This document shows positions 22,308 to 62,681 of a DNA stretch of 64,000 nt, piece by piece; the first letter of the stretch is position 1; each line of letters starts with the position of its first letter. The stretch lies in the IMG/VR virus record IMGVR_UViG_3300034072_002211, positions 213,445-277,444 of that record; one strand, given 5' to 3'. The translations under genes and the position numbers were made by a program. The notes beneath the pieces are model-generated. The model was not told where the DNA came from, ran no database searches, and worked only from the letters and a program-made list of their open reading frames with translations.

Positions 22308-22646
22308 CTATACCGAGAAGTCCTCGGTCGGCACATAGCCACTGCCAGGCGATTCCTGTGCCACAGTAATCATCACCAGCGGATCACGATCCACGGGCTG
22401 ACCCATGCGCTCAGGCAGCGCAAGGGACCACGTGATGTCCTTGATCCGATACTGCGAACCGTTGAGGAACACATAGGATCCCTCGGCAGGCAGGGTGACC
22501 AGCATTGTGTCGCCCATGATGTGCCAGCGATCCACGTCCTTGGGATCGAGACGCTCGCCCTTCTCCATGGCCTTCTCGACTTCCTGCTGGACTTCGAGAT
22601 AGTTCTTTTCGCGCCGGAAGATGACTCCCGTGAAAGCCTCGATCAC
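22308..22646 (-). CDS. hypothetical protein
   Basis: ORF in operon. Confidence 0.65.
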   Translation of the reverse strand: MIEAFTGVIFRREKNYLEVQQEVEKAMEKGERLDPKDVDRWHIMGDTMLVTLPAEGSYVFLNGSQYRIKDITWSLALPERMGQPVDRDPLVMITVAQESPGSGYVPTEDFSV

Positions 22647-23976: not shown

Positions 23977-24495
23977 ATGACCAAAGATCGATCCGAATCG
24001 GACAGCACTTCTCCAGTGAAACCAACCCTTCCGGGTCTCATGGGGAATTACTCAGACGAGGAACTCAACGCTCATGTGGTAAAGCACGCCAAGTATTTTA
24101 CGGTGGTGCAGGTTACCCGAGGTGGGTTCGTGGGTGGCGGTAAGAACTATGATCGCCATCAAGTCGACACGCTCGAGGATGCCCGAGCAAAGGCCAAAGA
24201 GCTCTATGATACAGATCCCTCAAAGCGCGGCATTCTGATCTATGCGGTCGCCGACTTCGCAGGAGCGAATGGTTTCAGCCGACCGGTGGAGAACTATCCA
24301 CCGACCACGTATATGACAAAGGGCGACAAGGCCAAGCTTGAGAAGAAGCAGAAAGCCGAAGCTCGTCAGCGACTGCGCGATGCGCGAATGAACCTCGGGG
24401 AAGGACGCATCAACAAGCGCCCAGCGAAGCCCGCTGAGATGTCAGACGATGAGTTTATGAACAACCCCGAGCCCATGGTGCGGGTGGAGCCTTAG
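23977..24495 (+). CDS. hypothetical protein
   Basis: ORF from ATG 23977, convergent with next gene. Confidence 0.65.
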   Translation: MTKDRSESDSTSPVKPTLPGLMGNYSDEELNAHVVKHAKYFTVVQVTRGGFVGGGKNYDRHQVDTLEDARAKAKELYDTDPSKRGILIYAVADFAGANGFSRPVENYPPTTYMTKGDKAKLEKKQKAEARQRLRDARMNLGEGRINKRPAKPAEMSDDEFMNNPEPMVRVEP

Positions 24496-24914: not shown

Positions 24915-25247
24915 ATGTCAAATGAGAACAGCCTCACCAGTATTTACGTCATTGGACCTGAGGGTGGTCCCTACAAGATTGGTTATGCCCAGGACCCCAA
25001 GGCTCGTCTGAGCAATCTACAGGTGGGGCAGGCTGTTGAGCTCAAGCTTCACTATGAGGAAGCCACGGAGACAGCGACCGCCAAGGTTATTGAAAAGCTG
25101 ATCCACAAGCAGATAGCCCATAAGCGAGTGCGTGGCGAATGGTTTGATGTTTCGCTTGAGGAAGCCATAGGTGAGGTCAGGTTCGCATTCATCCGTTGGG
25201 AGGACGAACCGAACCTGACCTTTAGGTATAAGAGGAAGTTGCTTTAG
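24915..25247 (+). CDS. GIY-YIG superfamily T5orf172/MUG113-like protein
   Basis: IYVIG...YKIGY...RL..LQ, E..IH, GEWF. Confidence 0.8.
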   Translation: MSNENSLTSIYVIGPEGGPYKIGYAQDPKARLSNLQVGQAVELKLHYEEATETATAKVIEKLIHKQIAHKRVRGEWFDVSLEEAIGEVRFAFIRWEDEPNLTFRYKRKLL

Positions 25248-28643: not shown

Positions 28644-29978
28644 CTAGAGTTGCGGCAATTCCCACTTGACCTTGATCGTGCCGCCCTTTGTGGGCTTACG
28701 CTTGCGGAAAGCAAGGAAGCCCCTAAAGAGCAATTCGATCTTCTGTTCCCTCACAATACCACTGAGGTCCATCAGCTTCTCGCGAGTAATGTAGGCCGCG
28801 CTGTCAGCTGCGATGTTCACGCCAGTGATGACCTGCTCCAGGAATTCCTTGGCGTCCTTCTCGTCCACCTTCATGAATTCATAATAGCAGAATCCCACCA
28901 CACTCGGCGGAGCGAGACGCTTGGCCTTGTTTCCAAACTTGTAGGGAAACTGAGCGGCTTCGTCGATCAACCGATCGTCTTTGGCCCGCTCATAAACATC
29001 TGGTCCCGAGATGCGATTGAGGTTCGCAAATCCTCGTCCCTCGTTGCGCTCATAAGAGAGCACAAAGCGGCTGATAGCTGCCATCGTGGTGGGCTGAGTG
29101 AATCCATCTGCGCTCAACTGATCGTGTGGACCACGGTTGGCACCAGTGTCCACGGTCTTGCGCGTTTGCCGCTCAACACCAAAGACGAACAGCACGGGAA
29201 TGCCAATGCCAGTTTCGAGGACCGCATAGCTGCGATGCTGGCCATTGTTCATCAGCCCTTCCTTGCTGATGATGATCGTCTCGCCGTTGAACTCCCAGCG
29301 GTTGTTCGCAATGTCGTCCACATATTGAGCCAACTTTGCGATGCGGATCGGCCGGTTGCCCTCATTGTTGTCGATGAGCACCTGAGCCAGAGCCGGCGTG
29401 AGAATTGCCTGCTCAGTGTGGACTTGCCGATTGCCCATCTTGACGCGAGTGTTGAACCACGCCGTTGCGACCTCGGGATCGTTGAGGTCTCCTGCGTCAG
29501 CAGTCTGTTCCTCGAGAATGTCTTCCTGGAAGTGGGTGGCGGGGAAGTGATGCTCAGGATCAGCTTCTCGCTTCAACGCTTCCACATCCATGAACGCGTC
29601 GGTCACATTGTCGGGAAGATCTCCCTTGAATGCGATCCGATTGTGCTCAGGATCATATTCACCCATGAGCTTTTGCGCCGTCATCTCTGTCTCTGGCGTC
29701 TTGATGCCAGAGAGATGATGCTCGCCCAGGCTTGATGCCCAGGCAAAATTACCCCGCACCGCATGGCTAAGCTTGACGCCCTCTTGCCCCAGCTGAGCGG
29801 TCAGGACACCCGACTGCTGACTGAGCCGGACCTTCTGGTAATCCTCAGGAACGTGCTCGAGGAACTCTTTGCTAACGCCCAGGCTCCAGACCAGTCGGGG
29901 CGTTGCTTTGCTGCCCATTCGCAATGCGCTCAAGCGCATGTCAACTGGGATTGTTCGTTCTGCCGTGATGCTAGTCAC
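28644..29978 (-). CDS. ParB/Srx-like domain protein
   Basis: NRPI, WEFNGETI, NNGQHR..AV. Confidence 0.7.
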   Translation of the reverse strand: MTSITAERTIPVDMRLSALRMGSKATPRLVWSLGVSKEFLEHVPEDYQKVRLSQQSGVLTAQLGQEGVKLSHAVRGNFAWASSLGEHHLSGIKTPETEMTAQKLMGEYDPEHNRIAFKGDLPDNVTDAFMDVEALKREADPEHHFPATHFQEDILEEQTADAGDLNDPEVATAWFNTRVKMGNRQVHTEQAILTPALAQVLIDNNEGNRPIRIAKLAQYVDDIANNRWEFNGETIIISKEGLMNNGQHRSYAVLETGIGIPVLFVFGVERQTRKTVDTGANRGPHDQLSADGFTQPTTMAAISRFVLSYERNEGRGFANLNRISGPDVYERAKDDRLIDEAAQFPYKFGNKAKRLAPPSVVGFCYYEFMKVDEKDAKEFLEQVITGVNIAADSAAYITREKLMDLSGIVREQKIELLFRGFLAFRKRKPTKGGTIKVKWELPQL

Positions 29979-31510: not shown

Positions 31511-31810
31511 CTACATGAAGGTGACACGGAGGTAGGTTGTTTCTTCGGCACGTCTCGGACCCTGATCTACCACGGGACCCGTGATAGTCTCGAGGTAAGC
31601 GAACTCATAGGTGCCGTCCTTGTCCTTGACGGTAGAGAAGAGAAGCTCACGCATCTGCTTCTTGTTGAGTTCGTTGTCGATGATCATGCGGAAGATTCGC
31701 CTACCGTCGTGATCCACAAAGTGGGCGACATTGACATAGATGCCTAGCTTCTCAGCCACGGCTTCAGTGAGGAGGTGACCAACGGGATAGTCACGCGCGT
31801 CTAGGTGCAT
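31511..31810 (-). CDS. hypothetical protein
   Basis: ORF. Confidence 0.65.
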   Translation of the reverse strand: MHLDARDYPVGHLLTEAVAEKLGIYVNVAHFVDHDGRRIFRMIIDNELNKKQMRELLFSTVKDKDGTYEFAYLETITGPVVDQGPRRAEETTYLRVTFM

Positions 31811-39700: not shown

Positions 39701-39796
39701 TGGTAGGGGTGGAGGGATTCGAACCCTCGTCGTCGCCTAATCTGGGCTCTCGCAAGGTATAAGCTTGCCCGCTCTTGACCGCTGAGCTACACCCCC
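39701..39796 (-). tRNA. tRNA-Ile(UAU) with long variable arm
   Basis: Cloverleaf, loop CTTATAC, 23-nt variable arm, encoded CCA. Confidence 0.85.
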
Positions 39797-39799
39797 ATG

Positions 39800-40108
39800 T
39801 CAGAATATGTAGATAGCTTGCTCGGCTATCTCATACCATACGGGCTTGAGCTCATCTATGATCGCGTCTACCTGAAACTGGTGGACTTCGGTGGGGACGT
39901 TCTTTGACATGGCGTCGCGCAGTTCTTCTGCCATGAGTTCTAGTGCCCTGAATGGCCACTTCTTCTCAACCCACAATGGCATCACGTGGCAGACCATGCC
40001 AACCACAATAGCATCAAGTGCTTGATCTGGGGTGAGAAGCTGTTGAGCGCGTTGCTCAACAGTTAGGGCCTTTGGCTCAGGAAGTCGGAACTCTAGGATC
40101 TTCGCCAT
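39800..40108 (-). CDS. hypothetical protein, late promoter
   Basis: TAAATA just upstream. Confidence 0.65.
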   Translation of the reverse strand: MAKILEFRLPEPKALTVEQRAQQLLTPDQALDAIVVGMVCHVMPLWVEKKWPFRALELMAEELRDAMSKNVPTEVHQFQVDAIIDELKPVWYEIAEQAIYIF

Positions 40109-40189: not shown

Positions 40190-40268
40190 TGGTGGCCGTT
40201 GTGGGGCTCGAACCCACAACTCTCAGGGGTTTAGAATCCCCGGCTCTGCCAGCTTGAGCTAAACGGCC
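40190..40268 (-). tRNA. amber suppressor-type tRNA, anticodon CUA
   Basis: Cloverleaf GGCCGTT/AACGGCC, loop TTCTAAA, CCA. Confidence 0.85.
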
Positions 40269-40308: not shown

Positions 40309-40608
40309 TTAGTCAGCAGAGATTGGCTTCTCAGGCGTGAAATGATCGATACCTACAAAGACCGTGAAGTCGCGAGCCTTGAGGTATTCTTCCACCTGCT
40401 CTGGCTTCCTGAACCTCCTGACGTCGTCTCGGGAGAACCAAGCAATGTAGGCACCATTGCGGAAGAGAACTTCCATGGTGTGATGTCCTGAAGCATCAGT
40501 GAAATGAGCGGAATCACCCTGCTCGTTAGCATGATCCCAATTGGGAACAGTGCGACCGAGGATCATGGGATCACCCATTGCTTCGTTGACGATTTCATTC
40601 CACTTCAT
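40309..40608 (-). CDS. hypothetical protein, late promoter
   Basis: TAAATA and GGAGG upstream. Confidence 0.7.
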   Translation of the reverse strand: MKWNEIVNEAMGDPMILGRTVPNWDHANEQGDSAHFTDASGHHTMEVLFRNGAYIAWFSRDDVRRFRKPEQVEEYLKARDFTVFVGIDHFTPEKPISAD

Positions 40609-40632: not shown

Positions 40633-41175
40633 TTAGCGGTTGTAGCCGCCCCTATTGGGGAAGGAGAGTCCTGGAATCATGATAATCGTGGCATCATACC
40701 AGTCGGTCACGGCCTTCAGCAGTTCGCCGTTGGCGCCAATGACCTCATCCAGGTATTGAGTCATGAGCCGGTTGGGACACATTGCTGGGCTGAGCAGCTT
40801 GACCTTGGCCAGAGCATCCTTGGGGCTCATACCGTGAAGCACCAGCACCGCAATAGCGATTGCCGTGCTGCGGCTCTTTCCCGCTGAACAGTGAATCAGC
40901 ACCTTGCTGTCATCGTTCAACTCCCAGCTCTTTACCTCGTCGATGATGTCCTGCATGTCTTTCTTGGTCGGTGGGACCAAGTCAGCGTATTCCTCAGGAT
41001 CGTCATCCTCGACGTCATGGAAGTTGTAGATCGCGTGGTTGTTGTGTTGGCGGTCAATGGTCGTCGCAGGCCAGTTGGGTCCCGCGTCATTGATAACGCT
41101 GATGATGTGGGTCGGCCAGTCCTGAGCAATCAGGGTCTTGGCTTTGTGGATTCCGAGGACTTTGAGTTCAAACAT
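40633..41175 (-). CDS. protein tyrosine/dual-specificity phosphatase-like
   Basis: IHCSAGKSRS CX5R, PN..M. Confidence 0.85.
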   Translation of the reverse strand: MFELKVLGIHKAKTLIAQDWPTHIISVINDAGPNWPATTIDRQHNNHAIYNFHDVEDDDPEEYADLVPPTKKDMQDIIDEVKSWELNDDSKVLIHCSAGKSRSTAIAIAVLVLHGMSPKDALAKVKLLSPAMCPNRLMTQYLDEVIGANGELLKAVTDWYDATIIMIPGLSFPNRGGYNR

Positions 41176-46939: not shown

Positions 46940-48262
46940 TTATGTGACGCGGACCTTATCGTCAAGATATCGCTGACCCATATCCAACTCACTTAGGTAG
47001 TGGCAGTTGAGCATATAGGGGCGAAGAACCTCTGGAATCATGACGTCATCGGTCGTCTGGTAATTCTCCAGAACCGCAACCAAAGTGCGACCAACCGCCA
47101 AGCCAGAGCCATTTAGCGTGTGGGCGTAGAACGTCTCGCCATTGACCTTATAGCGGGTGTTCATACGACGCGCTTGGAAGTCGCCGCAGTTCGAGACGCT
47201 GCTGATCTCGCGGTAGGTGTTCTGGCCAGGAAGCCAGACCTCGATGTCGTAGGTCTTCTGTGCGCTGAACCCCATGTCGCCCGCGCACAATAGCATCGTG
47301 CGATAGGTCAGGTCCAACTTGGCCAGGATCTGCTCCGCGGCGTTGAGCATATAGTCATGCTCATGAGCACTCTGCGAAGGCTCACAGACAGTCACGAGTT
47401 CGACCTTTTGGAACTGATGCTGTCGGATAAGCCCGCGCGTGTCTCGGCCCGCAGAGCCCGCCTCTGAGCGATAGCAATCGGTGAGAGCCACGTAGCGATG
47501 CCGCCCACCCAAAAGGATCTGATCCGCATGAATGTTAGTCAGGCTGACTTCAGCCGTGGGGATCAGGAACTGAGTGGGTTCACTTGCTCCATCCTCATCA
47601 GCAATACCAAAGAGATCCTCTTTGAACTTGGGCAGTTGCCCCGTTCCGTAAAGAGCTTCCTCGTTGACGATGGTGGGAGGGATGACCTCACGGTAGCCGC
47701 GCTTGATCTGTTCATCCAGCATGAACTGTCCGAGAGCACGATGTAGTCGAGCCACCGGACCCTGAAGCATTGAGAAGCGCGAGCCGCTGATCTTTGCCGC
47801 CGCGTCAAAACCCAGATCGACTTGATCCAGTTCATAATGCGGTGTGCCATCCCTTGCGCCGACCTTGCCCCAGCGACGGACTTCCACGTTACTGGTCTCG
47901 TCCGTGCCATCTGGCACATCAGCCGCAGGCACGTTGGGACACATGATCAGGAATGCCTCGAGCATCTCTTCAGCGTGAGTTGCCTGAGCAGCCCACATTG
48001 TTTCATTTTGCTTGAGAAGCTTCACCAACTCCTTGAGGGCGTCAGCTGAAGCAGTATTACCCTCCTTCATGGCTTTGCCAATTTCCTGACTCTTGGCCTT
48101 GATTAGGCTGCGAGTGTCCTGAAGCCTCGTGAGCGCATCGCTACGGCGGCTTGCGAACTGCTGGATCTTGTCGATGTGGGGATCGTGCCCGCGGCGCTTC
48201 ATAGCAGCCACGAACTCATCCGGCTTAGCCAGGATGCCCTTGACGTCAAAGTGATACTTCAT
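46940..48262 (-). CDS. serS: seryl-tRNA synthetase
   Basis: GTGQLPKF, PTAEV, CYRSEAG, HQFQKVE, YREISS, HTLNGSGLAVGR. Confidence 0.97.
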   Translation of the reverse strand: MKYHFDVKGILAKPDEFVAAMKRRGHDPHIDKIQQFASRRSDALTRLQDTRSLIKAKSQEIGKAMKEGNTASADALKELVKLLKQNETMWAAQATHAEEMLEAFLIMCPNVPAADVPDGTDETSNVEVRRWGKVGARDGTPHYELDQVDLGFDAAAKISGSRFSMLQGPVARLHRALGQFMLDEQIKRGYREVIPPTIVNEEALYGTGQLPKFKEDLFGIADEDGASEPTQFLIPTAEVSLTNIHADQILLGGRHRYVALTDCYRSEAGSAGRDTRGLIRQHQFQKVELVTVCEPSQSAHEHDYMLNAAEQILAKLDLTYRTMLLCAGDMGFSAQKTYDIEVWLPGQNTYREISSVSNCGDFQARRMNTRYKVNGETFYAHTLNGSGLAVGRTLVAVLENYQTTDDVMIPEVLRPYMLNCHYLSELDMGQRYLDDKVRVT

Positions 48263-48339
48263 AGTGCCAGCTTGCTTCCAAATTGGAATAGAGTCAACCA
48301 TTCATGGCGAAGCCCCGGAGCGTCCTCCGGGGCTTGCTC

Positions 48340-54960: not shown

Positions 54961-54963
54961 TAG

Positions 54964-55037
54964 CATCGGGGGATGGACTCGAACCACCGCCTAGCGCAGC
55001 TTCACGCCGCACCGCTCTACCACTGAGCTACCCCGAT
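54964..55037 (-). tRNA. atypical tRNA, identity undetermined
   Basis: Good D and T arms; loop CGTGAAG lacks U33; ends CTA rather than CCA. Confidence 0.65.
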
Positions 55038-55162
55038 ATATTCGGGTAGGGAACTTGCTGTCTTCCGACTCTGGGTCCCTACCCTAGAAAGTGCGTCGCT
55101 AGGCTTGCACAATCTCTGTGTCTGTTGATAGAGGGTTCTGGACCATCCGTCAACAACTATTT

Positions 55163-55852
55163 TCAGTCGTCGTTCGAAACGCCGACAAAGCGCAGGATGA
55201 AGAGGAACATATTCAGGAAGTCGAGGTAGAGGTTCAGAGCCCCCATGACCACGATACGTCCCTGAGTGTCACCGTCCAGGCGGGGCGTGTAGGCTTCCTT
55301 GAGCGTCTGCGTGTCCCACGCGGTCAGACCGGCGAAGATCAGGATACCCGCAATGCCGATGAACAGGTTCAGACCCGTGCTGGGAATGAAGATGTTCAGG
55401 ATCATGAGCGCCAGCAGACCGAACAGCGCGAACACCAGGAACGCACCGATGGGGCCGAGGTTACGCCGGGTCGTATAGCCGTAAAGCGAACAGCCTGCGA
55501 AGCCCACCGCGCTAGCCAGGAAGGCCATGAGGATGGAACCGCCGGTGTAGCGGCTCAGGATCACCGACAGACCGAGGCCCTCGATGACCACGAACGACCA
55601 GTAGAGAGTGTGGAGGGTGGCCAGCTTCATGCGCTCGACACCGAGGCTCATTGCGAGCACCAGACCAAGCGGCGAGAGCGCCACCAGCCAGAACAGGAGA
55701 CCACCCTGCTTGAGGGTATCGACCAGGCCGCTCGCAGTGGCGAACCACGCCGCGCCGGCGCTGACCAGGAGACCCGTGAGCATCAGATTGTAGATGCTCG
55801 TCATATAGTTGCGAAGACCCTGGTCATAGGTCTCGCCGCGAGTGAGTTCCAT
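55163..55852 (-). CDS. Bax inhibitor-1/YccA family membrane protein
   Basis: Seven TMs; FAGLTAWDTQ.LK, ALNLYLDFLNMF. Confidence 0.95.
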   Translation of the reverse strand: MELTRGETYDQGLRNYMTSIYNLMLTGLLVSAGAAWFATASGLVDTLKQGGLLFWLVALSPLGLVLAMSLGVERMKLATLHTLYWSFVVIEGLGLSVILSRYTGGSILMAFLASAVGFAGCSLYGYTTRRNLGPIGAFLVFALFGLLALMILNIFIPSTGLNLFIGIAGILIFAGLTAWDTQTLKEAYTPRLDGDTQGRIVVMGALNLYLDFLNMFLFILRFVGVSNDD

Positions 55853-55910
55853 TTAGTGATTTACCTCCATAAGAACCATGTTGCCATGATAATGGAGGTT
55901 CACCTAACTG

Positions 55911-56294
55911 TCAACCTAGGTTGTTGAGCACCACGATAGCGGCCACGATCCAAGCGCCGTAGATCCAGTTGTTCCACTTCAACCGGCGTTCAATCCGGCT
56001 CCACTCGTTCAGGGAGTTCTGACAACGCTGGCTGTGGTCTAGGTCCTCGCCGCCTTTGATCGTATATTTGCCAGTTGCGCTATTGTAGCTCATGCTGAAC
56101 GATGGACGGCTGAAATGCTTGCGAGAATTCTCACGCGCGGCATTCTCACCATCGGTGTCGTAGCAGATGTTCATCATGATACGCATACCAAAATACATGA
56201 TCGTGCCGATACAGGCAAAGATCAGAACTTCTTGGCGGTCCATACCTTGGAGCCAACCCAGGGCTCCGACGAAGAGGAGGAAGATCACATACAT
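55911..56294 (-). CDS. membrane protein
   Basis: Three TM segments; start moved to ATG 56294, past the Y RNA. Confidence 0.55.
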   Translation of the reverse strand: MYVIFLLFVGALGWLQGMDRQEVLIFACIGTIMYFGMRIMMNICYDTDGENAARENSRKHFSRPSFSMSYNSATGKYTIKGGEDLDHSQRCQNSLNEWSRIERRLKWNNWIYGAWIVAAIVVLNNLG

Positions 56295-56305
56295 CGATCT
56301 GGGAT

Positions 56306-56453
56306 GAGTGCGACGGGCAAGAGATCGTCTATGGATAGGAGCCTGCTGCTCTACCACCTGAGCTACCCGATCCAGCTTGCGGCCTTGACGGGGTGGGGAT
56401 CGAACCCACGACCTTCTGGTTAGTTAACCCACGGACTACGGCCCGTCGCACTC
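56306..56453 (-). ncRNA. Y RNA, YrlA-like with permuted tRNA domain
   Basis: 12-bp terminal stem, GGGCCG..GGGTTA..CTTG; T arm precedes D arm. Confidence 0.8.
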
Positions 56454-56505
56454 ACTATATGGCAGAACGGACGGCTTGTTGTCAAGCCGTCCGTTGAATG
56501 GACTC

Positions 56506-56568
56506 GAGAGCAAGTTGGTTAGCCTGGGGGTTCATCTTCAAAAGGATAACCCAAGCCATTCGGCTCTC
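56506..56568 (-). ncRNA. Y RNA, minimal Ro60-binding stem only
   Basis: GAGAGCCGAATGGCTTGGGTTATC..CAACTTGCTCTC. Confidence 0.75.
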
Positions 56569-56573
56569 AAGTT

Positions 56574-56649
<76 letters not shown>

Positions 56650-56702
56650 GTTGTGCCACCCTCTTAGACGAGGGCTGGTGGGGCGTCAACCGTTTTTCTT
56701 TG

Positions 56703-56785
56703 TAGGGGCGGAGAGATTCGAACTCTCAAAAACCACCGATTTTAAGCCGGCAGGGTGTTCCGGTTTCCCACTAGGTCACGCCCCC
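56703..56785 (-). tRNA. tRNA-Leu(UAA), atypical arms
   Basis: Loop CTTAAAA; long D region and short variable arm. Confidence 0.75.
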
Positions 56786-56788
56786 ATG

Positions 56789-57049
56789 TCAGTTAATGCA
56801 GAACCGCTTGGTTAAGCCGCGGTCCTCGAGGATCTCGACTTTGACGCCGCGATCCCGCATTCCCTGGATCATCCTGTCGAACTCATCGAACCGCTCCGAA
56901 ACAGCACGAGCCTTGAAGCAGTTGGGGCTCTCAGAATAAATTACCACGGGATGCAACTTCCTGCTTTGTTGTGCGTTCGTCAGCCCAATACGTGGTTTCA
57001 CGTAGTCGCGCAAGTCACTCGGATGAATTCTTTGGTTGTGCTTCCGCAA
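56789..57049 (-). CDS. hypothetical protein
   Basis: ORF. Confidence 0.55.
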   Translation of the reverse strand: MRKHNQRIHPSDLRDYVKPRIGLTNAQQSRKLHPVVIYSESPNCFKARAVSERFDEFDRMIQGMRDRGVKVEILEDRGLTKRFCIN

Positions 57050-57548
57050 TGACTTTGAGGAGCGCCTCTTCCATTAGCTGATTGAGCGTGATATCTCGAG
57101 CATGGGCCTGCTTGAACAGTTCAAGAAGAACATCATCTTCTAGATCCAACGGAATCTGGACCCGCTTATCGAAGTCCTCGTTCTTGAGCATCGCAACGCC
57201 CTTTTCCAGCAGGTCTTCAACAAGTTCCAGATCCACGTAGCTGAAGCCTTCCCAGGCTTCATCCTTGGCTACGTTGCGGCTCTCTGCTTCGTTGAAGATC
57301 GCATCCTTGTAATCAGGATTGATCCAACGGTAGGCATAGTCATGCTCAGAATCCAACTCGGTGGTCGCAGTGAGCTCGATGACTTCCTGAGTCTCGCGGT
57401 TGAAGACAATCTTCATAGCCGCAAAACCATTCACATAGCCAAGCACCTGGCCATTCTCATAAGAGCGCCACTGGTGCTCCCAAGCATCGTTGATCCGATA
57501 CTCGACGGCTTCCATGAACTGCTGAAGGATGCTCACACTAGACCTCAC
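57015..57548 (-). CDS. hypothetical protein with C-terminal RHH-like motif
   Basis: LFKQAHARDITLNQLMEEAL. Confidence 0.7.
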   Translation of the reverse strand: MRSSVSILQQFMEAVEYRINDAWEHQWRSYENGQVLGYVNGFAAMKIVFNRETQEVIELTATTELDSEHDYAYRWINPDYKDAIFNEAESRNVAKDEAWEGFSYVDLELVEDLLEKGVAMLKNEDFDKRVQIPLDLEDDVLLELFKQAHARDITLNQLMEEALLKVIAEAQPKNSSE

Positions 57549-58501
57549 TCTTGGGTTCGATCTAGTCCGCTCTCACTAGACTGCCGCTCACCAGAAGTCA
57601 ACCTACTTTCTGCGAATGCGATATACTGGTCATCTACGTCAAAGCCCAAGTAGCTGAGACCCTCAGCTTGAGCAGCTACCGCACTCGTTCCAGTGCCAAT
57701 GAAAGGGTCCAAGAGGGTGCCTGAGACACCCGAGAACTTGATAGCGCGTCTGACTAGCTCAACAGGAAAAGTTGCCGGATGAGTGCCCCTCTGGGCGCCA
57801 CGATCAGCAATCGTTTCGTATGGGATATACCACACGTTTCCTGGGCAATGAAGGTCCTCTACGGGCTTGGCCTTTGCGAGCTTGCGCGCGAGTGCGTCCT
57901 CGAGTTCTTGCTTCTCAGCGGGGCTCGCTGACGCATCAAAGGCGCGCTTGTTCTCGAAGCCCATCTTCTTGATCAGCTTGCCGCGCCAACGAGAACTCTT
58001 ATCCAAGTTGCCCTTGTCTGCGTAGGGAACGCCAATCGCCGTCTTCTGACATGGGACGTTGCCAGTCTTCGTGAAGTGGAAGAGATGCTCCCACGTGGGG
58101 TTCGCGAACCGCTGACTGTTGATGGGCTTATAATGACCCAACTGGACATCGTCGATCGCAATACTCTTGACCCACGTGAAGTTGTTCTGGAGGATCATGT
58201 GCTTGCGCGCAACATTCGCGACATCCATGCCCACCCATGGGTCCACGTTGCTGTAACCCATATTGAGGAAGAAGTGCCCCTCGGGTTTCAACACACGAGC
58301 AATCTGCCCAAAGATATCAGAGAGCCAAGCCAAATAGGCTTCACGTGGTTGATTGTCCTCGTAGGCACCATACTTGATATCGAGGTTATAGGGCGGGCTG
58401 GTCACGCAAATGTCAATGGACTCTACGTCGAGTGCCTTCATGCCCGCGAGGCAGTCCTGGTGGATGATCTTGTTCACCAGATAATTATGCCTAGAAGTCA
58501 T
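57545..58501 (-). CDS. N4-cytosine/N6-adenine DNA methyltransferase, beta class
   Basis: TSPPYN, HPATFP, DPFIGTGTS; start moved to ATG 58501. Confidence 0.9.
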   Translation of the reverse strand: MTSRHNYLVNKIIHQDCLAGMKALDVESIDICVTSPPYNLDIKYGAYEDNQPREAYLAWLSDIFGQIARVLKPEGHFFLNMGYSNVDPWVGMDVANVARKHMILQNNFTWVKSIAIDDVQLGHYKPINSQRFANPTWEHLFHFTKTGNVPCQKTAIGVPYADKGNLDKSSRWRGKLIKKMGFENKRAFDASASPAEKQELEDALARKLAKAKPVEDLHCPGNVWYIPYETIADRGAQRGTHPATFPVELVRRAIKFSGVSGTLLDPFIGTGTSAVAAQAEGLSYLGFDVDDQYIAFAESRLTSGERQSSESGLDRTQE

Positions 58502-58535
58502 GGAAAAAGCGGCACCAGCCGAAGCCAGTGCCACT

Positions 58536-58623
58536 TGGAGGATAGCGGGGAACTCGAATCCCAGTCCCTTGCGGGACCCAACCCGTTTCCAGCGGGTGCC
58601 GCACCCCGTGCGGTTCACTATCC
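58536..58623 (-). tRNA. tRNA-Ser(GGA)
   Basis: Loop CTGGAAA, long variable arm, CCA. Confidence 0.9.
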
Positions 58624-58624
58624 A

Positions 58625-58715
58625 TGGAGGAAGGCTGCGGTCTCGATCCGCAAGCGGCTCATCACCGCTCCAACTGGTTTCGAATCAGTGCCAGGCCCCG
58701 CCTGGTTAACCTTCC
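58625..58715 (-). tRNA. tRNA-Ser(CGA)
   Basis: Loop TTCGAAA, long variable arm, CCA. Confidence 0.9.
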
Positions 58716-58719
58716 ATGT

Positions 58720-58853
58720 ATTTGCGAGCAAGTTAAGGACTGGATGTTTTCGGTGCTACCACTACACTACAGGCCAGTTTCCCGACCTGCTGGGACTCGA
58801 ACCCAGCCTCGCTTTTTTCAAGAAAGATAACCCAAACCATTCGGCTCGCAAAT
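58720..58853 (-). ncRNA. Y RNA, YrlA-like
   Basis: CCGAATGGTTTGGGTTATC..AACTTG; permuted T-acceptor-D with loop-closed acceptor. Confidence 0.8.
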
Positions 58854-58858
58854 CTATT

Positions 58859-59009
58859 TAGTTGAGGGCAAGTTGCCGCCTGGAATCATTTCCGCCGCGT
58901 TTGCCAATTCCGCCACTCCCCGTCATGTGGTCGGGGAGCCAGGACTCGAACCTGGAAGACCTTAGTCAGCAGTTTCCATCAGATAACCCAAACTGTCGGC
59001 CCTCAACTA
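58859..59009 (-). ncRNA. Y RNA, YrlA-like with CCA-bearing permuted tRNA
   Basis: GGGCCGACAGTTTGGGTTATC; CTCCCCG-A-CCA-CATGA-CGGGGAG; CAACTTGCCC. Confidence 0.8.
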
Positions 59010-59012
59010 TTC

Positions 59013-59246
59013 TTACGCATCAGGATTCTTGTTAGCCTTGATAGCTTCAATCCTAGCATTCATCTGGGTTCGCATCTGAATCTTTTGGATCACAGTTGCT
59101 AGACCCTTGGGCATCTTGACTGTGTCTACATTACGAAGGGCACCAAAGAAGTCCCTTACGTCAGTAGCAAGCTCGTTGTGTTCAGCGCGAAGCTTCTCTA
59201 GCTCAGCACGAGTTTCAGCCAATTCTGCCTTCAAATTTTCATCCAT
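59013..59246 (-). CDS. small coiled-coil protein
   Basis: Heptad pattern. Confidence 0.6.
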   Translation of the reverse strand: MDENLKAELAETRAELEKLRAEHNELATDVRDFFGALRNVDTVKMPKGLATVIQKIQMRTQMNARIEAIKANKNPDA

Positions 59247-59272
59247 CGGGTTTTACCTCTGTTATTGGACGT

Positions 59273-59350
59273 TGGCGCCTCATACGGGATTCGAACCCGT
59301 GATCTCTACCGTGACAGGGTAGCGGGGACTCCAGACTCCCCTAATGAGAC
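59273..59350 (-). tRNA. tRNA-Asp(GUC)
   Basis: Loop CTGTCAC, G73, CCA. Confidence 0.9.
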
Positions 59351-59357
59351 GTGGGTG

Positions 59358-60290
59358 TCAGTCGAGCAAGCTGCTGACTGACTGCTCATCCGAGATGCGC
59401 TTGATTGCCTCTGCGAGCAATGGCGCCACGGTGAGCTGCCGGATCTTCTCCGCGCCGTGTTCCAGCGGGATGGTGTCCGTGATGACCAGTTCTTTGAGCG
59501 AACTATTGGCGACTCGTTCCAGAGCCTGCCCACTCAATACACCGTGGGTGCAGTATGCCGAAACGTCGCTTGCGCCAGCCTCTATGAGGGCCTTGGCAGC
59601 ATTGCAGAGCGTTCCCGCGCTGTCCACGATATCGTCGATGAGAATGCAGGACTTGCCCGAAACGTCACCGATGATGTTCATGACCTCCGACACACCGGCC
59701 TTTTCGCGGCGCTTGTCCACAATAGCAAGGGGTGCGTTCTCGAGGCGCTTTGCGAGCGCACGAGCCCGAACCACACCGCCAACGTCTGGGCTTACAACAC
59801 AAAGGTTGTCAATGACCATGCGGGCACGAATGTCTGCCGCGATCACTGGAGCAGCCGCGAGGTTGTCCGTGGGAATATCGAAGAAGCCCTGGATCTGACC
59901 AGCGTGGAGGTCGAGAGCCAACACACGATCCGCACCAGCAGCCGTGATCAAGTTGGCGACCAGCTTCGCGCTAATCGGCGTCCGAGGACCAGGCTTACGG
60001 TCTTGTCGAGCGTAGCCATAATAGGGAGTAACTGCCGTGATCCTGCGAGCCGAAGCGCGCTTGAGCGCATCGACGAGAACCAGGAGTTCCATGAGGTTGT
60101 CGTTGACCGGATTGCAGGTGCTCTGGAGGATGAATACATCCTCACCGCGCACGTTCTCCTTGATCTCCACGAAGATCTCTTCGTCTGCGAACCGACGAAC
60201 ACGGGCGTCAACGAGTGGAACCTCGAGATAGTCCGAGATGTTCTTTGCCAACTCTAGGTTGGCATTTCCGGCCAGCAGCTTCATCGTCAA
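59358..60290 (-). CDS. prs: ribose-phosphate pyrophosphokinase
   Basis: [38 protein letters not shown]. Confidence 0.97.
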
Positions 60291-60339
60291 CTCCCTATTT
60301 GGAAGTTCTTTCTAGCAGCTGGTGTCCGGCTTATCAATA

Positions 60340-60482
60340 TTCAACGGGCAAGTTGCGAAAAGGATGTTTTTCGGCGTCCTAACCACTAGACGAACCCCGC
60401 ATAGATTTTGGAGCGGGGTATGGGATTCGAACCCATGTAACCGGCGTGATAAGCGATAACCCTCATCAGTCGGCCCGTTGAA
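60340..60482 (-). ncRNA. Y RNA, YrlA-like with CCA-bearing permuted tRNA
   Basis: GGGCCGACTGATGAGGGTTATC; ACCCCGC-T-CCA-AAATCTAT-GCGGGGT; CAACTTGCCC. Confidence 0.8.
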
Positions 60483-60484
60483 AC

Positions 60485-60673
60485 TTAGGCGGATTCCAGA
60501 CTGGTTTCTGGAATGCCGAGCATCTTCAATCCCACGTAGAAATTGTCGGTCTTTTCGATGACCTCAATGTCCCAGTGGGTATAGCGTTCGGTGTAGTGAC
60601 GTTGCGCGATGATCCGGCAAAGTGGTTTGCCATGTTGGCTTTTGAACCGCACTTCCTGATCTTCGCTAAACAT
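60485..60673 (-). CDS. small hypothetical protein
   Basis: GGAG RBS before ATG 60673. Confidence 0.55.
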   Translation of the reverse strand: MFSEDQEVRFKSQHGKPLCRIIAQRHYTERYTHWDIEVIEKTDNFYVGLKMLGIPETSLESA

Positions 60674-60723
60674 CAGCAACTCCTTTGTGGCCTTTATAGC
60701 CAGGAGGTTCACCGTTGTCAATG

Positions 60724-60791
60724 CGCTCCAGAGAGGATTCGAACCTCCAAAGGCCGCTTTAGGAGAGCAGCGTCCATCCATTGGCTGAAGC
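60724..60791 (-). tRNA. tRNA-Arg(CCU), truncated D arm
   Basis: Loop CTCCTAA; 68 nt. Confidence 0.75.
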
Positions 60792-60792
60792 A

Positions 60793-60869
60793 TGGCGTTC
60801 CCGAGACGACTCGAACGTCCGACCTTTACCTTCGCAGGGTAACGCTCTATCCAACTGAGCTACGGGAAC
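60793..60869 (-). tRNA. tRNA-Arg(GCG)
   Basis: Loop CTGCGAA, CCA. Confidence 0.9.
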
Positions 60870-60876
60870 ATGGAAG

Positions 60877-60988
60877 ACGACGAGCAAGTGGCGAAAGCCG
60901 ATTGCCCCCAAGGGCGCTTTCCCATAGGGTATATGGTGGGAAAGAGAGGAGTCGAACCTATGATAACGAATTTCAGTCGGCTCGTCGT
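60877..60988 (-). ncRNA. Y RNA, compact YrlA-like with CCA
   Basis: ACGACGAGCCGA..GTTATC; CTTTCCC-A-CCA-TATACCCTAT-GGGAAAG; CACTTGCTCGTCGT. Confidence 0.75.
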
Positions 60989-60991
60989 TTG

Positions 60992-61064
60992 TGGAGAATA
61001 TGGGAATCGAACCCATCGCAGCGATGGTGCGAGCATCGCCTGTGTAACACCCAGCACATTCCCC
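60992..61064 (-). tRNA. tRNA-Ala(CGC)
   Basis: G3-U70, loop CTCGCAC. Confidence 0.85.
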
Positions 61065-61071
61065 AGGAGAG

Positions 61072-61230
61072 TCAAGACCCAAGGCCGGCTTCCGCACTTC
61101 CGGCACCAACATGGAATCCGGCGTTCAGTGGCCGGCCCATCAGCCCAACAAGTCAATCACTAGCCTATGGGGCGAGGGGCCTAGAAACCCAGCCTTCTCC
61201 ACATATTCGGTCATGACCCCATGGGTCTTG
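61072..61230 (-). ncRNA. unassigned small structured RNA
   Basis: CAAGACCCA/TGGGTCTTG terminal stem between tRNAs. Confidence 0.4.
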
Positions 61231-61302
61231 GTGCTTCCACTGAGAATCGAACTCAGGTTTACGGGTTACGAATCCGTTGTCCTACCACTGAACGATAGAA
61301 GC
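61229..61302 (-). tRNA. tRNA-Thr(CGU)
   Basis: Loop TTCGTAA, CCA. Confidence 0.9.
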
Positions 61303-61303
61303 A

Positions 61304-61379
61304 TGGTGCCGGTGAAAGGACTCGAACCCTCAACCTTCTCCTTACAAGGGAGTTGCACTACCAATTGTGCTACACCGGC
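61304..61379 (-). tRNA. tRNA-Thr(UGU)
   Basis: Loop CTTGTAA, CCA. Confidence 0.95.
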
Positions 61380-61427
61380 AGGTTGTCCAAGGACTCAAAC
61401 AACAGTGCATCCGTGCTGTCAAGTCCT

Positions 61428-61503
61428 TGGTGCTCCCGGTAGGAGTCGAACCTACGACCTACGCCTTCGGAGGGCGGCGCTCTATCCACTGAGCTACGGA
61501 AGC
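61428..61503 (-). tRNA. tRNA-Arg(CCG)
   Basis: Loop CTCCGAA, CCA. Confidence 0.95.
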
Positions 61504-61504
61504 A

Positions 61505-61575
61505 TGGAGCCCCTACTAGGATTCGAACCTAGCCTCCAGCGTTCGAAGCGCCGGGTCCTGTCCACAGGCAGAGGC
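61505..61575 (-). tRNA. tRNA-Arg(UCG), short D arm
   Basis: Loop CTTCGAA, CCA; 71 nt. Confidence 0.8.
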
Positions 61576-61582
61576 AAGTTAG

Positions 61583-61657
61583 TGGTGACCCATACGAGAT
61601 TCGAACTCGTGTTAACGCCGTGAGAGGGCGTCGTCCTGACCACTAGACGAATGGGCC
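61583..61657 (-). tRNA. tRNA-Glu(CUC)
   Basis: Loop CTCTCAC, CCA. Confidence 0.95.
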
Positions 61658-61666
61658 GTTAGAGGG

Positions 61667-61936
61667 TTACGCGCTGGGCTTCTTGTCAGCGATTGCCTCA
61701 GTGGTCGCAAAGCGCAACAGGGCAGTCGTGATACCAACGAACGCAAAGATTGGACCATACCACGCATCAGGGATCACACCCTGCATCTGTGGCAAGTAGG
61801 TCTCTGCCGCACCGAAGACAGCAACAGCGCCACCGAACCAAATCGTCTTCGATTTAGCGGTTGCGATGAGCCAGTCCTTGGCGTTGAAGCCAAATGCTTT
61901 GAGCACTTCGAGGGCGGGAGCAACATTGTATGCCAT
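61667..61936 (-). CDS. holin-like membrane protein
   Basis: KSKTIWF followed by two TMs and a basic tail; TAAATA late promoter. Confidence 0.55.
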   Translation of the reverse strand: MAYNVAPALEVLKAFGFNAKDWLIATAKSKTIWFGGAVAVFGAAETYLPQMQGVIPDAWYGPIFAFVGITTALLRFATTEAIADKKPSA

Positions 61937-62225
61937 GGGAAATCCTCCTGGGGTTTCCCATATTTAGCTTGACCAGCGGGTTTCCACTCTTCCCGCACCA
62001 TCGCATGACAGTCCCAACATGAGCTCCGTCCCTCGTCCAAGGAGGGCAGCGACTACAGCACCAGCCCCTATAGCCAATACAGCGTAGGCTTGATCAAGCA
62101 ATTTCACTACCAGTAGGGATCCACATTTCCCTACACCGAAGAGCACCCGGTTTCGCTGACCCGACTTTAACCTGCTTTGCTCTTCACTTGCTCCAGGCGG
62201 TCAGTGCCTTGGCAGTAAATTAGAA

Positions 62226-62288
62226 CATGGGCAAGTTGGCAAGCTTGGGGTTCATCAAAGCAGGATAACCCAAGCCATTCGGCCCATG
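62226..62288 (-). ncRNA. Y RNA, minimal Ro60-binding stem only
   Basis: CATGGGCCGAATGGCTTGGGTTATC..CAACTTGCCCATG. Confidence 0.75.
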
Positions 62289-62291
62289 CGT

Positions 62292-62367
62292 TGGTTGCGG
62301 AGGTCGGATTTGAACCGACGTGCTTCTGGTTATGAGCCAGACGAGATAACCACTCCTCTACCCCGCG
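62292..62367 (-). tRNA. initiator tRNA-fMet(CAU)
   Basis: C1-A72 mismatch, loop CTCATAA, CCA. Confidence 0.9.
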
Positions 62368-62411
62368 TCAAAACTGTTAGTTGGGCTTGCGCTTTGCGTC
62401 AAGACCCTTTG

Positions 62412-62597
62412 TGGAGCCGAGGGGATTCGAACCCCCACAACGCGCTGACCCTAGCATTACCAAGGGCTGGTGTGTAGGTTCAAAGACTCGTCGCGAGCCT
62501 GTAAAAAATATCCCACACCATCTTACGCAGCTCGTCGGATTTTACTCCGAATCGCCCTGTCTTTTGCGACTGCCTGTCCCTCTAGGCGGACGGCCCC
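62412..62597 (-). ncRNA. minimal tmRNA-like RNA, 186 nt
   Basis: GGGGCCG/CGGCTCC-A acceptor with G3-U70, canonical T arm, internal reading frame DELRKMVWDIFYRLATSL-stop. Confidence 0.55.
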
Positions 62598-62605
62598 ATA
62601 GGTAT

Positions 62606-62681
62606 TGGTGCTAAGGGCGGGAATCGAACCCACTTCCTCCGATTTTCAGCCGGGTGCATTGACCACAGTTGCTTCCTTAGC
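62606..62681 (-). tRNA. tRNA-Phe(GAA)
   Basis: Loop CTGAAAA, CCA. Confidence 0.9.

What the first reader, a model, noticed from the sequence alone, without database searches (positions are those of the whole stretch)
40190..40268. Amber CUA tRNA in a genome that still uses TAG as stop
Seen: an intact cloverleaf with CTA at 40232-40234. TAG ends lysS (12191), 22308, 24495, 25247 and 31511, so there is no global recoding here. Inference: conditional readthrough, suppression of host stops, or a decoy.
Basis: partly seen in the sequence, partly recalled or inferred. Interest (0 to 1): 0.6.

Follow-up and report, generated by a model that had tools for sequence, protein, structure and literature searches.

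The report
Conserved amber suppressor tRNA, jumbo phage
A large bacteriophage that ends some of its own genes with TAG carries an intact tRNA built to read TAG, one of a pair kept at fixed positions in its relatives; this puzzle is already reported in other jumbo phages, and here TAG is shown to be a true stop with no gene that needs the tRNA.

Summary
Window 40190-40268 (- strand) is an intact tRNA gene with anticodon CUA at 40232-40234.

The contig is 60% of a roughly 470 kb T4-like jumbo myovirus related to Sinorhizobium phage Phosso and Agrobacterium phage Atu_ph07, from a subsurface metagenome.

- **A second copy.** The genome has another tRNA-CUA outside the window.
- **Conservation.** Phosso and the five closest IMG/VR relatives with full or near-full genomes each carry two. 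Each genome has one with discriminator A73 (the window type) and one with G73. Both loci are syntenic, the stems show compensatory changes, and the anticodon loop is invariant.
- **TAG is a real stop.** It ends about 6% of genes and swaps with TAA and TGA between orthologues. It never sits inside a conserved gene, and the sequence after TAG stops has no conserved coding extension.
- **Not pyrrolysine.** The tRNA lacks tRNA-Pyl features and no PylS or release factor gene was found.
- **Identity.** The body resembles the phages' short-arm tRNA-Leu, then tRNA-Lys.

Most likely it is a working low-level amber suppressor with no dedicated target gene. Xanthomonas phage XacN1 is a published precedent, so this is a new member of a known, unexplained kind.

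The parts
40190..40268 (-). tRNA with anticodon CUA (amber-suppressor type), discriminator A73, encoded CCA, 7-nt variable loop, A31.C39 mismatch, U32
   Evidence: ARAGORN. Rfam tRNA 48 bits. Parsed arms. Syntenic orthologues in G305 at 330698-330776 and G304 at 293258-293333.
39800..40108 (-). 102-aa ORF directly downstream of the tRNA; conserved neighbour, no family match
   Evidence: 77% identical in G304 next to its tRNA-CUA and 43% in G305. No Pfam or PHROG hit.
39701..39796 (-). tRNA-Ile(UAU) with an extra arm of about 21 nt; neighbour of the tRNA-CUA
   Evidence: ARAGORN and Rfam, 53.7 bits. The same pairing of tRNA-Ile(UAU) with tRNA-CUA is seen in G304.
40309..40608 (-). 99-aa ORF directly upstream of the tRNA; unknown function
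   Evidence: ORF list. Weak homologue in the same place in G304. No family hit.
40633..41175 (-). dual-specificity protein phosphatase-like gene; conserved flank of the tRNA locus
   Evidence: PF00782, 9.1e-10. Homologues flank the tRNA-CUA in G304 (52%) and G305 (72%).
12191..13885 (-). class I lysyl-tRNA synthetase, terminated by TAG
   Evidence: PF01921, 4.6e-94. NF001968, 560 bits. The stop is TAG here and in G304 but TGA in G305.
22308..22646 (-). TAG-terminated ORF (112 aa)
   Evidence: Scored gene set. The G305 orthologue ends in TAA.
23977..24495 (+). TAG-terminated ORF (172 aa)
   Evidence: Scored gene set. The G304 orthologue ends in TAA.
24915..25247 (+). TAG-terminated ORF (110 aa); TAG kept in G304 and G305, TGA in Phosso
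   Evidence: The long in-frame extension has negative coding potential and lies over a convergent - strand ORF.
31511..31810 (-). TAG-terminated ORF (99 aa); a second stop follows 3 codons later
28644..29918 (-). TAG-terminated ORF (424 aa, PHROG 5931, unknown function)
   Evidence: The G304 orthologue ends in TAA.
46940..48301 (-). seryl-tRNA synthetase, part of the phage's translation gene set
   Evidence: PF00587 and PF02403. TIGR00414, 442 bits.
54963..63873 (-). main tRNA cluster (17 tRNA genes by ARAGORN), including tRNA-Lys(CUU) at 56574-56649

Best explanation
The gene encodes a working amber-suppressor tRNA. It is transcribed with the surrounding - strand genes, matured, charged by a synthetase that tolerates the CUA anticodon, and delivered to ribosomes, where it competes with release factor 1 at UAG. 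Leucine is the most likely amino acid and lysine second.

It is one of two such tRNAs, an A73 type and a G73 type, that this jumbo-phage lineage keeps at fixed genome positions. No phage gene requires it. TAG stays a true but leaky stop. The phage tolerates the leak because TAG ends only about 6% of its genes, mostly short ones, and another in-frame stop follows within about 10 codons. The benefit is therefore general, either disturbing host termination or buffering nonsense mutations, not gene-specific.

Shown: intact structure, conservation, synteny, TAG as a stop, absence of in-frame TAG. Inferred: expression, charging, the amino acid, readthrough and the benefit.
For: **Structure.** The tRNA is intact and has the universal tertiary nucleotides.

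**Conservation.**
- Syntenic orthologues with CUA occur in G304 and G305, with 48 of 51 stem positions paired and compensatory changes at 4 pairs.
- The sister family (G73 type) has 9 syntenic members with 153 of 153 stem positions paired and compensatory changes at 15 of 17 pairs.
- The loop YU-CUA-AA is the same in 22 of 24 collected CUA tRNAs; the other two have C38.
- Exactly two CUA tRNAs were found by full scan in the own contig, Phosso, G304 and G305. Two each were found in G302, G303 and G309.

**TAG is a stop.**
- Orthologue stop swaps.
- No internal TAG in conserved genes.
- Short, non-coding extensions after TAG.

**TAG use.** It is lower in the four suppressor-bearing genomes than in two relatives without one. 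For genes of at least 200 aa the counts are 31/680 against 49/493, Fisher p 4e-4.

**Identity.**
- Anticodon-masked isotype profiles place all three family-2 orthologues with the phages' short-arm tRNA-Leu at 31.5-34.6 bits. The runner-up is Lys for the window copy and G305 (27.6 and 25.3 bits) and Arg for G304 (26.2 bits).
- They share A73, A14 and an A15-U48 pair with those tRNA-Leu.
- The best full-length bacterial BLAST hits are tRNA-Lys(CUU).

**Precedent.** XacN1 has two CUA suppressors, 18 TAG stops and no target found (PMC5852040).
Against: - There are no expression, charging or readthrough data. The only sequencing runs that hold the sequence are DNA.
- The window copy has an A31.C39 mismatch and U32 where its orthologues have a pair and C32, so it may be a weak suppressor.
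- The TAG-usage contrast rests on six related genomes. It vanishes if G307 is left out (p 0.38). TAG is the rarest stop in most bacteria and phages anyway.
- The isotype classifier is right in only 73% of leave-one-out tests, and the margin for the window copy is 3.9 bits.
- The contig is 60% complete. A target gene could lie in the missing part, although the complete relatives show none among the genes shared with another genome.
- The gene set comes from a home-made caller.
Confidence: 0.55

Rival explanations
1. Programmed readthrough or local recoding. The tRNA exists to read one or a few specific TAG codons in phage genes, giving extended isoforms or decoding an in-frame TAG. These could lie in the 40% of the genome missing from this contig or in lineage-specific genes.
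For: - The contig is only 60% complete.
- About a third of the genes have no homologue in the relatives and so could not be tested.
- TAG is retained at the same stop in own, G304 and G305 for three small genes.
- Recoded phages do carry such tRNAs (PMC13037316).
Against: - No in-frame TAG appears in 273 + 240 clean alignments for this genome, or in the reciprocal comparisons among G304 and G305.
- The only long coding-like extension after a TAG is a separate gene with its own ribosome-binding site and ATG.
- Extensions are not conserved, and the 'conserved' TAG stops are TAA or TGA in Phosso.
- No release factor gene is present.
Confidence: 0.12
2. Non-translational use. The tRNA is an aminoacyl carrier or a decoy. 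Either it is charged and used by a tRNA-dependent transferase, with the stop anticodon keeping it out of sense-codon decoding, or it soaks up a host tRNA-targeting nuclease.
For: - Phage Mu Mom uses Gly-tRNA-Gly to modify DNA, a precedent for non-ribosomal use of charged tRNA by phages (PMC13219725).
- The sister tRNA-CUA sits in a tRNA-metabolism module with a catalytic-core-only GlyRS-like enzyme, CysRS, Pth2 and a kinase-phosphatase.
Against: - The GlyRS-like gene is also present in G313 and G307, which have no suppressor tRNA at all.
- It is absent from XacN1 and RHph_I1_18, which do have one.
- No FemAB family member was found, and only a sub-threshold GNAT-like match.
- Invariant U33, A37 and A38 together with the anticodon are what decoding requires.
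- A CUA tRNA cannot replace any cleaved sense tRNA.
Confidence: 0.1
3. Tolerated by-product. With 55-60 tRNA genes, anticodon mutants arise, and a weak suppressor is nearly neutral where TAG stops are rare and backed up. The gene has no selected function.
For: - The tRNA complements are very large.
- The window copy carries a stem mismatch.
- No target was found here or in XacN1.
- Two relatives have lost or never had such tRNAs.
Against: - Two separate loci keep the CUA anticodon and a compensated cloverleaf in genomes whose shared proteins are only 40-62% identical.
- The A73/G73 pairing recurs even in XacN1.
- A neutral gene would be expected to decay or revert over that distance.
Confidence: 0.13
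4. Pyrrolysine tRNA, as ARAGORN and the GenBank annotation of relatives label it.
For: The label 'tRNA-Pyl' is given automatically to any CUA anticodon.
Against: - The tRNA has canonical G18G19, a T-loop GTTCGA, a 5-bp anticodon stem and a 7-nt variable loop, none of which fits tRNA-Pyl.
- No PylS C-terminal domain is found in the contig.
Confidence: 0.01

Closest known systems
The two CUA suppressor tRNAs of Xanthomonas jumbo phage XacN1 (Yoshikawa et al. 2018, PMC5852040)
   Same: - Jumbo myovirus with a very large tRNA set, the standard code and few TAG stops.
- Two amber-suppressor-type tRNAs, and no target gene found by in-silico readthrough.
- One XacN1 copy is 83% identical to this genome's other tRNA-CUA.
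- The XacN1 pair also consists of one A73 and one G73 tRNA.
   Different: - The XacN1 genes are tandem and lie in the terminal repeats.
- Here the two genes are about 225 kb apart, each in its own conserved neighbourhood.
- XacN1 lacks the GlyRS-like core gene found here.
Opal suppressor tRNA(UCA) of Agrobacterium phage Atu_ph07 (Attai et al. 2018, PMC6102473)
   Same: A relative of this phage (DNA polymerase 52% identical). It is a standard-code jumbo phage that carries a suppressor tRNA for a stop codon it uses itself.
   Different: Different stop codon. TGA is abundant in Atu_ph07 (267 genes), whereas TAG is the rare stop here. No CUA tRNA was found among the 23 Atu_ph07 tRNAs that I scanned.
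Suppressor tRNAs of TAG-recoded (code 15) phages such as Lak megaphages and some crAss-like phages
   Same: A phage-encoded tRNA with anticodon CUA (PMC13037316).
   Different: Those genomes have many in-frame TAG codons in late genes, and often a release factor 2 gene. Here there is no in-frame TAG, TAG stops are exchanged with TAA and TGA, and no release factor gene is present.
Escherichia coli amber suppressors derived from tRNA-Leu (supP/Su6) and tRNA-Lys (textbook knowledge, not tested here)
   Same: They arise by a single anticodon change from CAA or CUU to CUA. LeuRS does not read the anticodon, so a Leu-type body with A73 stays chargeable. The window tRNA has A73, A14 and A15-U48 and scores best with tRNA-Leu profiles.
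   Different: The E. coli suppressors are laboratory mutants of cellular genes with a long variable arm. This is a naturally conserved phage gene with a short variable loop, like the unusual short-arm tRNA-Leu genes of these phages.

Membership tests
Amber suppressor tRNA (elongator tRNA with anticodon CUA) | Complete cloverleaf with the universal tertiary nucleotides (U8, A14, G18G19, G53-T54-T55-C56, A58, C61) | tested here: met
   ARAGORN and Rfam tRNA at 48 bits. Arms parsed. These columns are invariant in the alignment of 15 CUA tRNAs.
Amber suppressor tRNA (elongator tRNA with anticodon CUA) | Seven-nucleotide anticodon loop with U33, C34-U35-A36 and a purine at 37 | tested here: met
   The loop is UUCUAAA. 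A36-A37-A38 is the usual context of tRNAs that read codons starting with U (established knowledge).
Amber suppressor tRNA (elongator tRNA with anticodon CUA) | Maintained by selection (orthologues keep the fold and the anticodon) | tested here: met
   There are three syntenic orthologues with compensatory changes. The sister family has 15 of 17 pairs with compensatory changes and no broken pair.
Amber suppressor tRNA (elongator tRNA with anticodon CUA) | Is aminoacylated and inserts an amino acid at UAG in vivo | not testable with these tools
   No RNA runs hold the sequence. This needs a reporter assay and mass spectrometry.
Pyrrolysine tRNA (tRNA-Pyl) | Atypical structure: 6-bp anticodon stem, 3-nt variable loop, small D loop without G18G19, no T54-Psi55-C56 | tested here: not met
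   It has a 5-bp anticodon stem, a 7-nt variable loop, G18G19 and GTTCGA.
Pyrrolysine tRNA (tRNA-Pyl) | Accompanied by pylS | tested here: not met
   TIGR02367 has no match in the contig, which is 60% complete.
TAG-recoded (code 15) phage genome | In-frame TAG codons inside conserved genes | tested here: not met
   There is no credible internal TAG in clean alignments to Phosso, G304 and G305.
TAG-recoded (code 15) phage genome | Coding density or gene length rises specifically when TAG is read as sense | tested here: not met
   Coding density is 0.892 under the standard code. It is 0.911 without TAG, 0.911 without TAA and 0.922 without TGA.
TAG-recoded (code 15) phage genome | TAG not used as a terminator | tested here: not met
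   27-28 scored genes end in TAG. Orthologues end at the same place in TAA or TGA.
tRNA-Leu-derived suppressor | A73 discriminator plus Leu-type core (A14, A15-U48) | tested here: met
   Present in the window copy and in both orthologues. The G73 family has G15-C48 instead.
tRNA-Leu-derived suppressor | Closest isotype when the anticodon is masked | tested here: inconclusive
   The short-arm Leu profile is best for all three orthologues, at 31.5-34.6 bits. The runner-up scores 25.3-27.6 bits (Lys for the window copy and G305, Arg for G304). The classifier is 73% accurate, and 58-72% accurate at such margins. BLAST against 301 bacterial genomes favours tRNA-Lys(CUU).

The most novel reading that the evidence does not exclude
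This jumbo-phage lineage, and independently XacN1, maintains a matched pair of amber suppressors with different discriminator bases (A73 and G73), which probably insert two different amino acids. That would make UAG a deliberately ambiguous stop during infection. It would be a stable 'ambiguous intermediate' on the road to the TAG reassignment seen in other huge phages, or a host-takeover device aimed at host genes that end in TAG.
Probability: 0.25. Interest if true: 0.65.

Novelty: new member of a known kind. Interest (0 to 1): 0.4.

Why it matters
Suppressor tRNAs in phages that keep the standard code have been noted several times and never explained. This case adds comparative evidence that they are not accidents. 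Two separate loci keep the anticodon and a compensated fold across genomes whose shared proteins are only 40-62% identical, always as one A73 and one G73 tRNA, while TAG remains a terminator.

One relative, Phosso, is cultured on Sinorhizobium meliloti and has the same pair. The question of what a suppressor does for a standard-code phage is therefore directly testable by knockout, tRNA sequencing and proteomics. If the tRNAs are active, they bear on how stop-codon reassignment begins in phages. They would also be natural, chargeable amber suppressors with unusual short-arm bodies.

Tried and rejected
1. **Near-identical DNA in GenBank phages:** none found.
2. **Exact-pattern scans of IMG/VR for the anticodon arm and T arm:** no hit, in two scans. 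Relatives were reached through a neighbouring protein instead.
3. **Crude longest-ORF gene set:** it overcounted TAG stops (64 of 412) because of shadow ORFs on the opposite strand. It was replaced by a codon-potential-scored set.
4. **Raw lists of stops inside tblastn alignments:** these were dominated by shadow frames and 5' leaders. After filtering, nothing credible remained.
5. **Candidate readthrough at genome 172801-173220:** rejected. The downstream piece has its own ribosome-binding site and ATG.
6. **Apparent conserved extension after the TAG at window 25247:** rejected as the shadow of a convergent gene, with negative coding potential.
7. **Phage class I LysRS as the partner of the tRNA:** LysRS is absent from Phosso, Atu_ph07 and RHph_I1_18, though G304 and G305 have it. 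No specific link.
8. **GlyRS-like core enzyme as a dedicated partner of the other tRNA-CUA:** weakened. The enzyme occurs in two genomes with no suppressor tRNA and is missing from two phages that have one.
9. **Split DNA polymerase of Atu_ph07 as an amber readthrough case:** rejected. The break is TAA plus TGA.
10. **Search of bacterial genomes with the LysRS to find a host:** gave only one MAG, which seems to contain phage contigs.
11. **Read laying and complex prediction:** not used. No RNA run was available, and no protein-protein claim is made.

Full report
**What is at the coordinates**

ARAGORN finds 21 tRNA genes on the - strand of the window. One lies at 40190-40268 and has anticodon CTA. 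Rfam's tRNA model scores it 48 bits, against a gathering score of 29.

The tRNA strand folds into a full cloverleaf:
- acceptor stem GGCCGUU paired with AACGGCC, and discriminator A73
- an encoded CCA end
- a 4-bp D stem with G18G19
- an anticodon stem with one A31.C39 mismatch
- anticodon loop UUCUAAA
- a 7-nt variable loop and a canonical T arm

ARAGORN's 'tRNA-Pyl' is only its label for any CUA anticodon. The structure has none of the tRNA-Pyl peculiarities, and the contig has no PylS.

**What genome this is**

The window is the last 64 kb of a single 277,444-bp contig with 54% G+C. It is an IMG/VR virus record that CheckV rates 60% complete, and it comes from a subsurface metagenome.

PHROG hits include a T4-type baseplate wedge, tail fibres, a family B DNA polymerase and an NAD-dependent ligase. 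The polymerase is 58% identical to that of Sinorhizobium phage Phosso (469 kb) and 52% to Agrobacterium phage Atu_ph07 (490 kb). So this is part of a jumbo myovirus of about 470 kb. A 468,011-bp contig carrying an identical protein exists in the public collections.

The contig encodes 25 tRNAs and several aminoacyl-tRNA synthetases:
- a class I LysRS and a SerRS in the window
- a CysRS
- a truncated ValRS-like protein
- a 272-aa GlyRS-like protein

**Is TAG a stop here?**

A first greedy longest-ORF set overcounted TAG because of shadow ORFs. A set scored by codon potential gives about 450 genes: 221 end in TAA, 201 in TGA and 28 in TAG, or 6%. Four lines of evidence agree that TAG terminates translation.

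- Reading any one stop codon as sense raises apparent coding density by a similar small amount, so there is no TAG-specific signal.
- After TAG stops the next in-frame stop comes after a median of 10 codons, and the stretch has no coding potential. The one long coding-like extension is a separate gene with its own Shine-Dalgarno sequence and ATG.
- Own genes ending in TAG have orthologues ending at the same place in TAA or TGA, and the reverse also holds. I fetched two closer relatives from IMG/VR for this test: G304 (436 kb; 316 of 450 genes shared, median 62% identity) and G305 (417 kb; 271 shared, 55%). The LysRS is an example, with TAG here and in G304 but TGA in G305.
- Six-frame comparisons found no credible in-frame TAG inside conserved genes. 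This holds for this contig (273 and 240 clean alignments of at least 80 aa) and for G304 and G305 compared with each other. The Phosso comparison agrees.

No release factor gene is present.

**The tRNA is one of a conserved pair**

The contig has a second tRNA-CUA at genome position c28717-28792, outside the window. Full scans show exactly two in Phosso, G304 and G305. Two each were found in G302, G303 and G309, and one each among the top model hits in G308, G310 and G312.

The window gene has positional orthologues in G305 (85% identical) and G304 (77%). Each lies between the same phosphatase-like gene and the same 102-aa ORF, and in G304 also next to the same unusual tRNA-Ile(UAU). In these three orthologues 48 of 51 stem positions pair, and four pairs show compensatory changes. 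The window copy alone has the A31.C39 mismatch and U32.

The second gene lies upstream of a conserved 272-aa gene in this contig, in Phosso and in all seven closest IMG/VR relatives. In those nine sequences all 153 stem positions pair, and 15 of 17 pairs carry compensatory changes.

Across the 24 CUA tRNAs collected, U33, the anticodon and A37 never vary, and A38 varies in only two. The window family always has A73 and an A15-U48 pair. The other family always has G73 and G15-C48. Each genome with two copies has one of each type. The same is true of the two tandem suppressors of Xanthomonas phage XacN1. This is strong evidence that both genes are kept by selection as tRNAs with this anticodon. 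It also hints that they are charged by different enzymes.

**Which amino acid?**

This can only be inferred.
- A BLAST of the window tRNA against 301 Pseudomonadota genomes gives tRNA-Lys(CUU) as the best full-length match, at 75-78% identity.
- I built isotype profiles from 236 phage tRNAs with anticodons masked. All three window-type orthologues score best with an unusual set of short-arm (77-79 nt) tRNA-Leu genes that these phages carry, at 31.5-34.6 bits. The runner-up is Lys for the window copy and G305 (27.6 and 25.3 bits) and Arg for G304 (26.2 bits).
- Leave-one-out accuracy of this classifier is 73% overall and 9 of 10 for short-arm Leu.

Bacterial LeuRS does not read the anticodon and relies on A73 and core tertiary features (established knowledge). 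Leu is therefore the most coherent guess and Lys the second. The G73 family has a Lys-like body, and its identity is open.

**Leads that weakened**

The 272-aa gene next to the other tRNA-CUA is a class IIa synthetase catalytic core closest to dimeric GlyRS. The evidence:
- PDB sequence match at 3.3e-9.
- The AlphaFold model has pLDDT 85, and its best Foldseek hits are GlyRS.
- Motifs 1-3 are invariant in 18 homologues.
- It has no anticodon-binding domain.

A dedicated anticodon-blind partner for a suppressor was an attractive idea. However, the gene is present in G313 and G307, which a full scan shows to have no suppressor tRNA. It is also absent from XacN1 and RHph_I1_18, which do have one. 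Likewise, the class I LysRS is absent from Phosso, Atu_ph07 and RHph_I1_18. I therefore make no claim of a dedicated synthetase.

**Is the suppressor active?**

The only available proxy is TAG usage.
- The four genomes with the pair use TAG for 5.5-9.8% of stops.
- The two relatives without any suppressor use it for 8.7% and 13.0%.
- For genes of at least 200 aa the counts are 31/680 against 49/493, Fisher p 4e-4.

This points the way an active suppressor predicts. But it rests on six related genomes, and one of them carries the effect: the p value is 0.38 without G307.

**Comparison with what is known**

The situation is already described. XacN1 has two CUA suppressors, 18 TAG stops and no target found by in-silico readthrough (PMC5852040). 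Atu_ph07 has a UCA suppressor although TGA is its common stop (PMC6102473). A Klebsiella jumbo phage paper lists the usual speculations: rescue of nonsense mutations, host takeover, or alternative codes (PMC8386662). A broad review of jumbo-phage gene content does not discuss the matter (PMC7824862).

What this analysis adds is the clade-wide, syntenic conservation of two loci, the A73/G73 pairing, and the explicit negative result for recoding and programmed readthrough.

**Verdict**

The most likely account is a functional, low-efficiency amber suppressor with a general effect and no dedicated target gene (confidence about 0.55). It is a new member of a known but unexplained kind, and it is now testable in the cultured relative Phosso.

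**Limits**
- The gene caller and the isotype classifier are home-made.
- The contig is 60% complete.
- The host is unknown.
- There are no RNA data.

Noticed in passing
G000:C1 c28717-28792 (= L002:8717-8792, - strand), outside the window: A second tRNA-CUA in the same genome, with discriminator G73 and a tRNA-Lys-like body. It is syntenic with a tRNA-CUA in Phosso and in seven IMG/VR relatives.
   Followed up: yes
G000:C1 c26978-27796 (= L002:6978-7796, - strand): A 272-aa class IIa synthetase catalytic core closest to dimeric GlyRS. It has no anticodon-binding domain and motifs 1-3 are invariant. More than 1,800 homologues of 245-290 aa exist in metagenomes, many on contigs of 200-560 kb. 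Its substrate is unknown.
   Followed up: partly
G000:C1 c57945-59333 (= L003:17945-19333, - strand): A ValRS-like protein of only 462 aa, against about 860 in bacteria. It matches the valS models in two stretches and seems to lack the middle part that holds the editing domain.
   Followed up: no
Phosso (e.g. 420741-420819, 427897-427973, 428078-428155, 439254-439332), G304 (308345-308421, 323401-323477, 323805-323881), RHph_I1_18 (L021:1491-1568): A set of short (77-79 nt) tRNA-Leu genes without the long variable arm. They cover several Leu anticodons and sit beside normal long-arm tRNA-Leu genes. This is unusual for bacterial-type systems.
   Followed up: partly
window 39701-39796 (- strand); also L113:250-342 in G304: tRNA-Ile with anticodon UAU and an extra stretch of about 21 nt in the variable region. 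It is conserved next to the tRNA-CUA in a relative. Whether the extra stretch is an arm or an intron is unknown.
   Followed up: no
window 56703-56785 (- strand): Rfam calls a weak tRNA here (30.5 bits, just over threshold) that ARAGORN does not report. It may be a degenerate or unusual tRNA next to tRNA-Lys(CUU).
   Followed up: no
G000:C1 c150066-153182 and c153195-155204: Two long ORFs (1,038 and 669 aa; the first is tail-protein-like) lie in the same frame with a TAA between them. More generally, TAA-ended genes are followed by an in-frame coding ORF more often than TGA- or TAG-ended genes. This is probably just gene packing.
   Followed up: partly
G000:C1 2475-13574 (+ strand): A 3,699-aa ORF directly after the baseplate wedge gene, 64% identical over its whole length to one in G305.
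   Followed up: no
L035, L036 and other contigs of genome G001 (JALOAT01, labelled a Gammaproteobacteria MAG): This MAG holds a class I LysRS 51% identical to the phage's and a GlyRS-like core 60% identical. Its tRNA-CUA is identical to that of IMG/VR jumbo phage G308. It probably contains mis-binned jumbo-phage contigs.
   Followed up: partly
whole contig G000:C1: IMG/VR classes the record as a provirus, but I saw no host-like flank. One end is virion genes, and the other end is a tRNA cluster that appears to be cut within a tRNA. A 468,011-bp contig with an identical protein exists elsewhere.
   Followed up: no
G000:C1 c28804-29262 (= L002:8804-9262, - strand): A 152-aa ORF with a potassium-channel pore domain (Ion_trans_2) next to the second tRNA-CUA.
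   Followed up: no
L014:2190-2220 (Atu_ph07 DNA polymerase): The Atu_ph07 polymerase is annotated as two genes. The junction has TAA and TGA within 18 bases in one frame, yet the alignment to this phage's single polymerase runs straight through it.
   Followed up: partly
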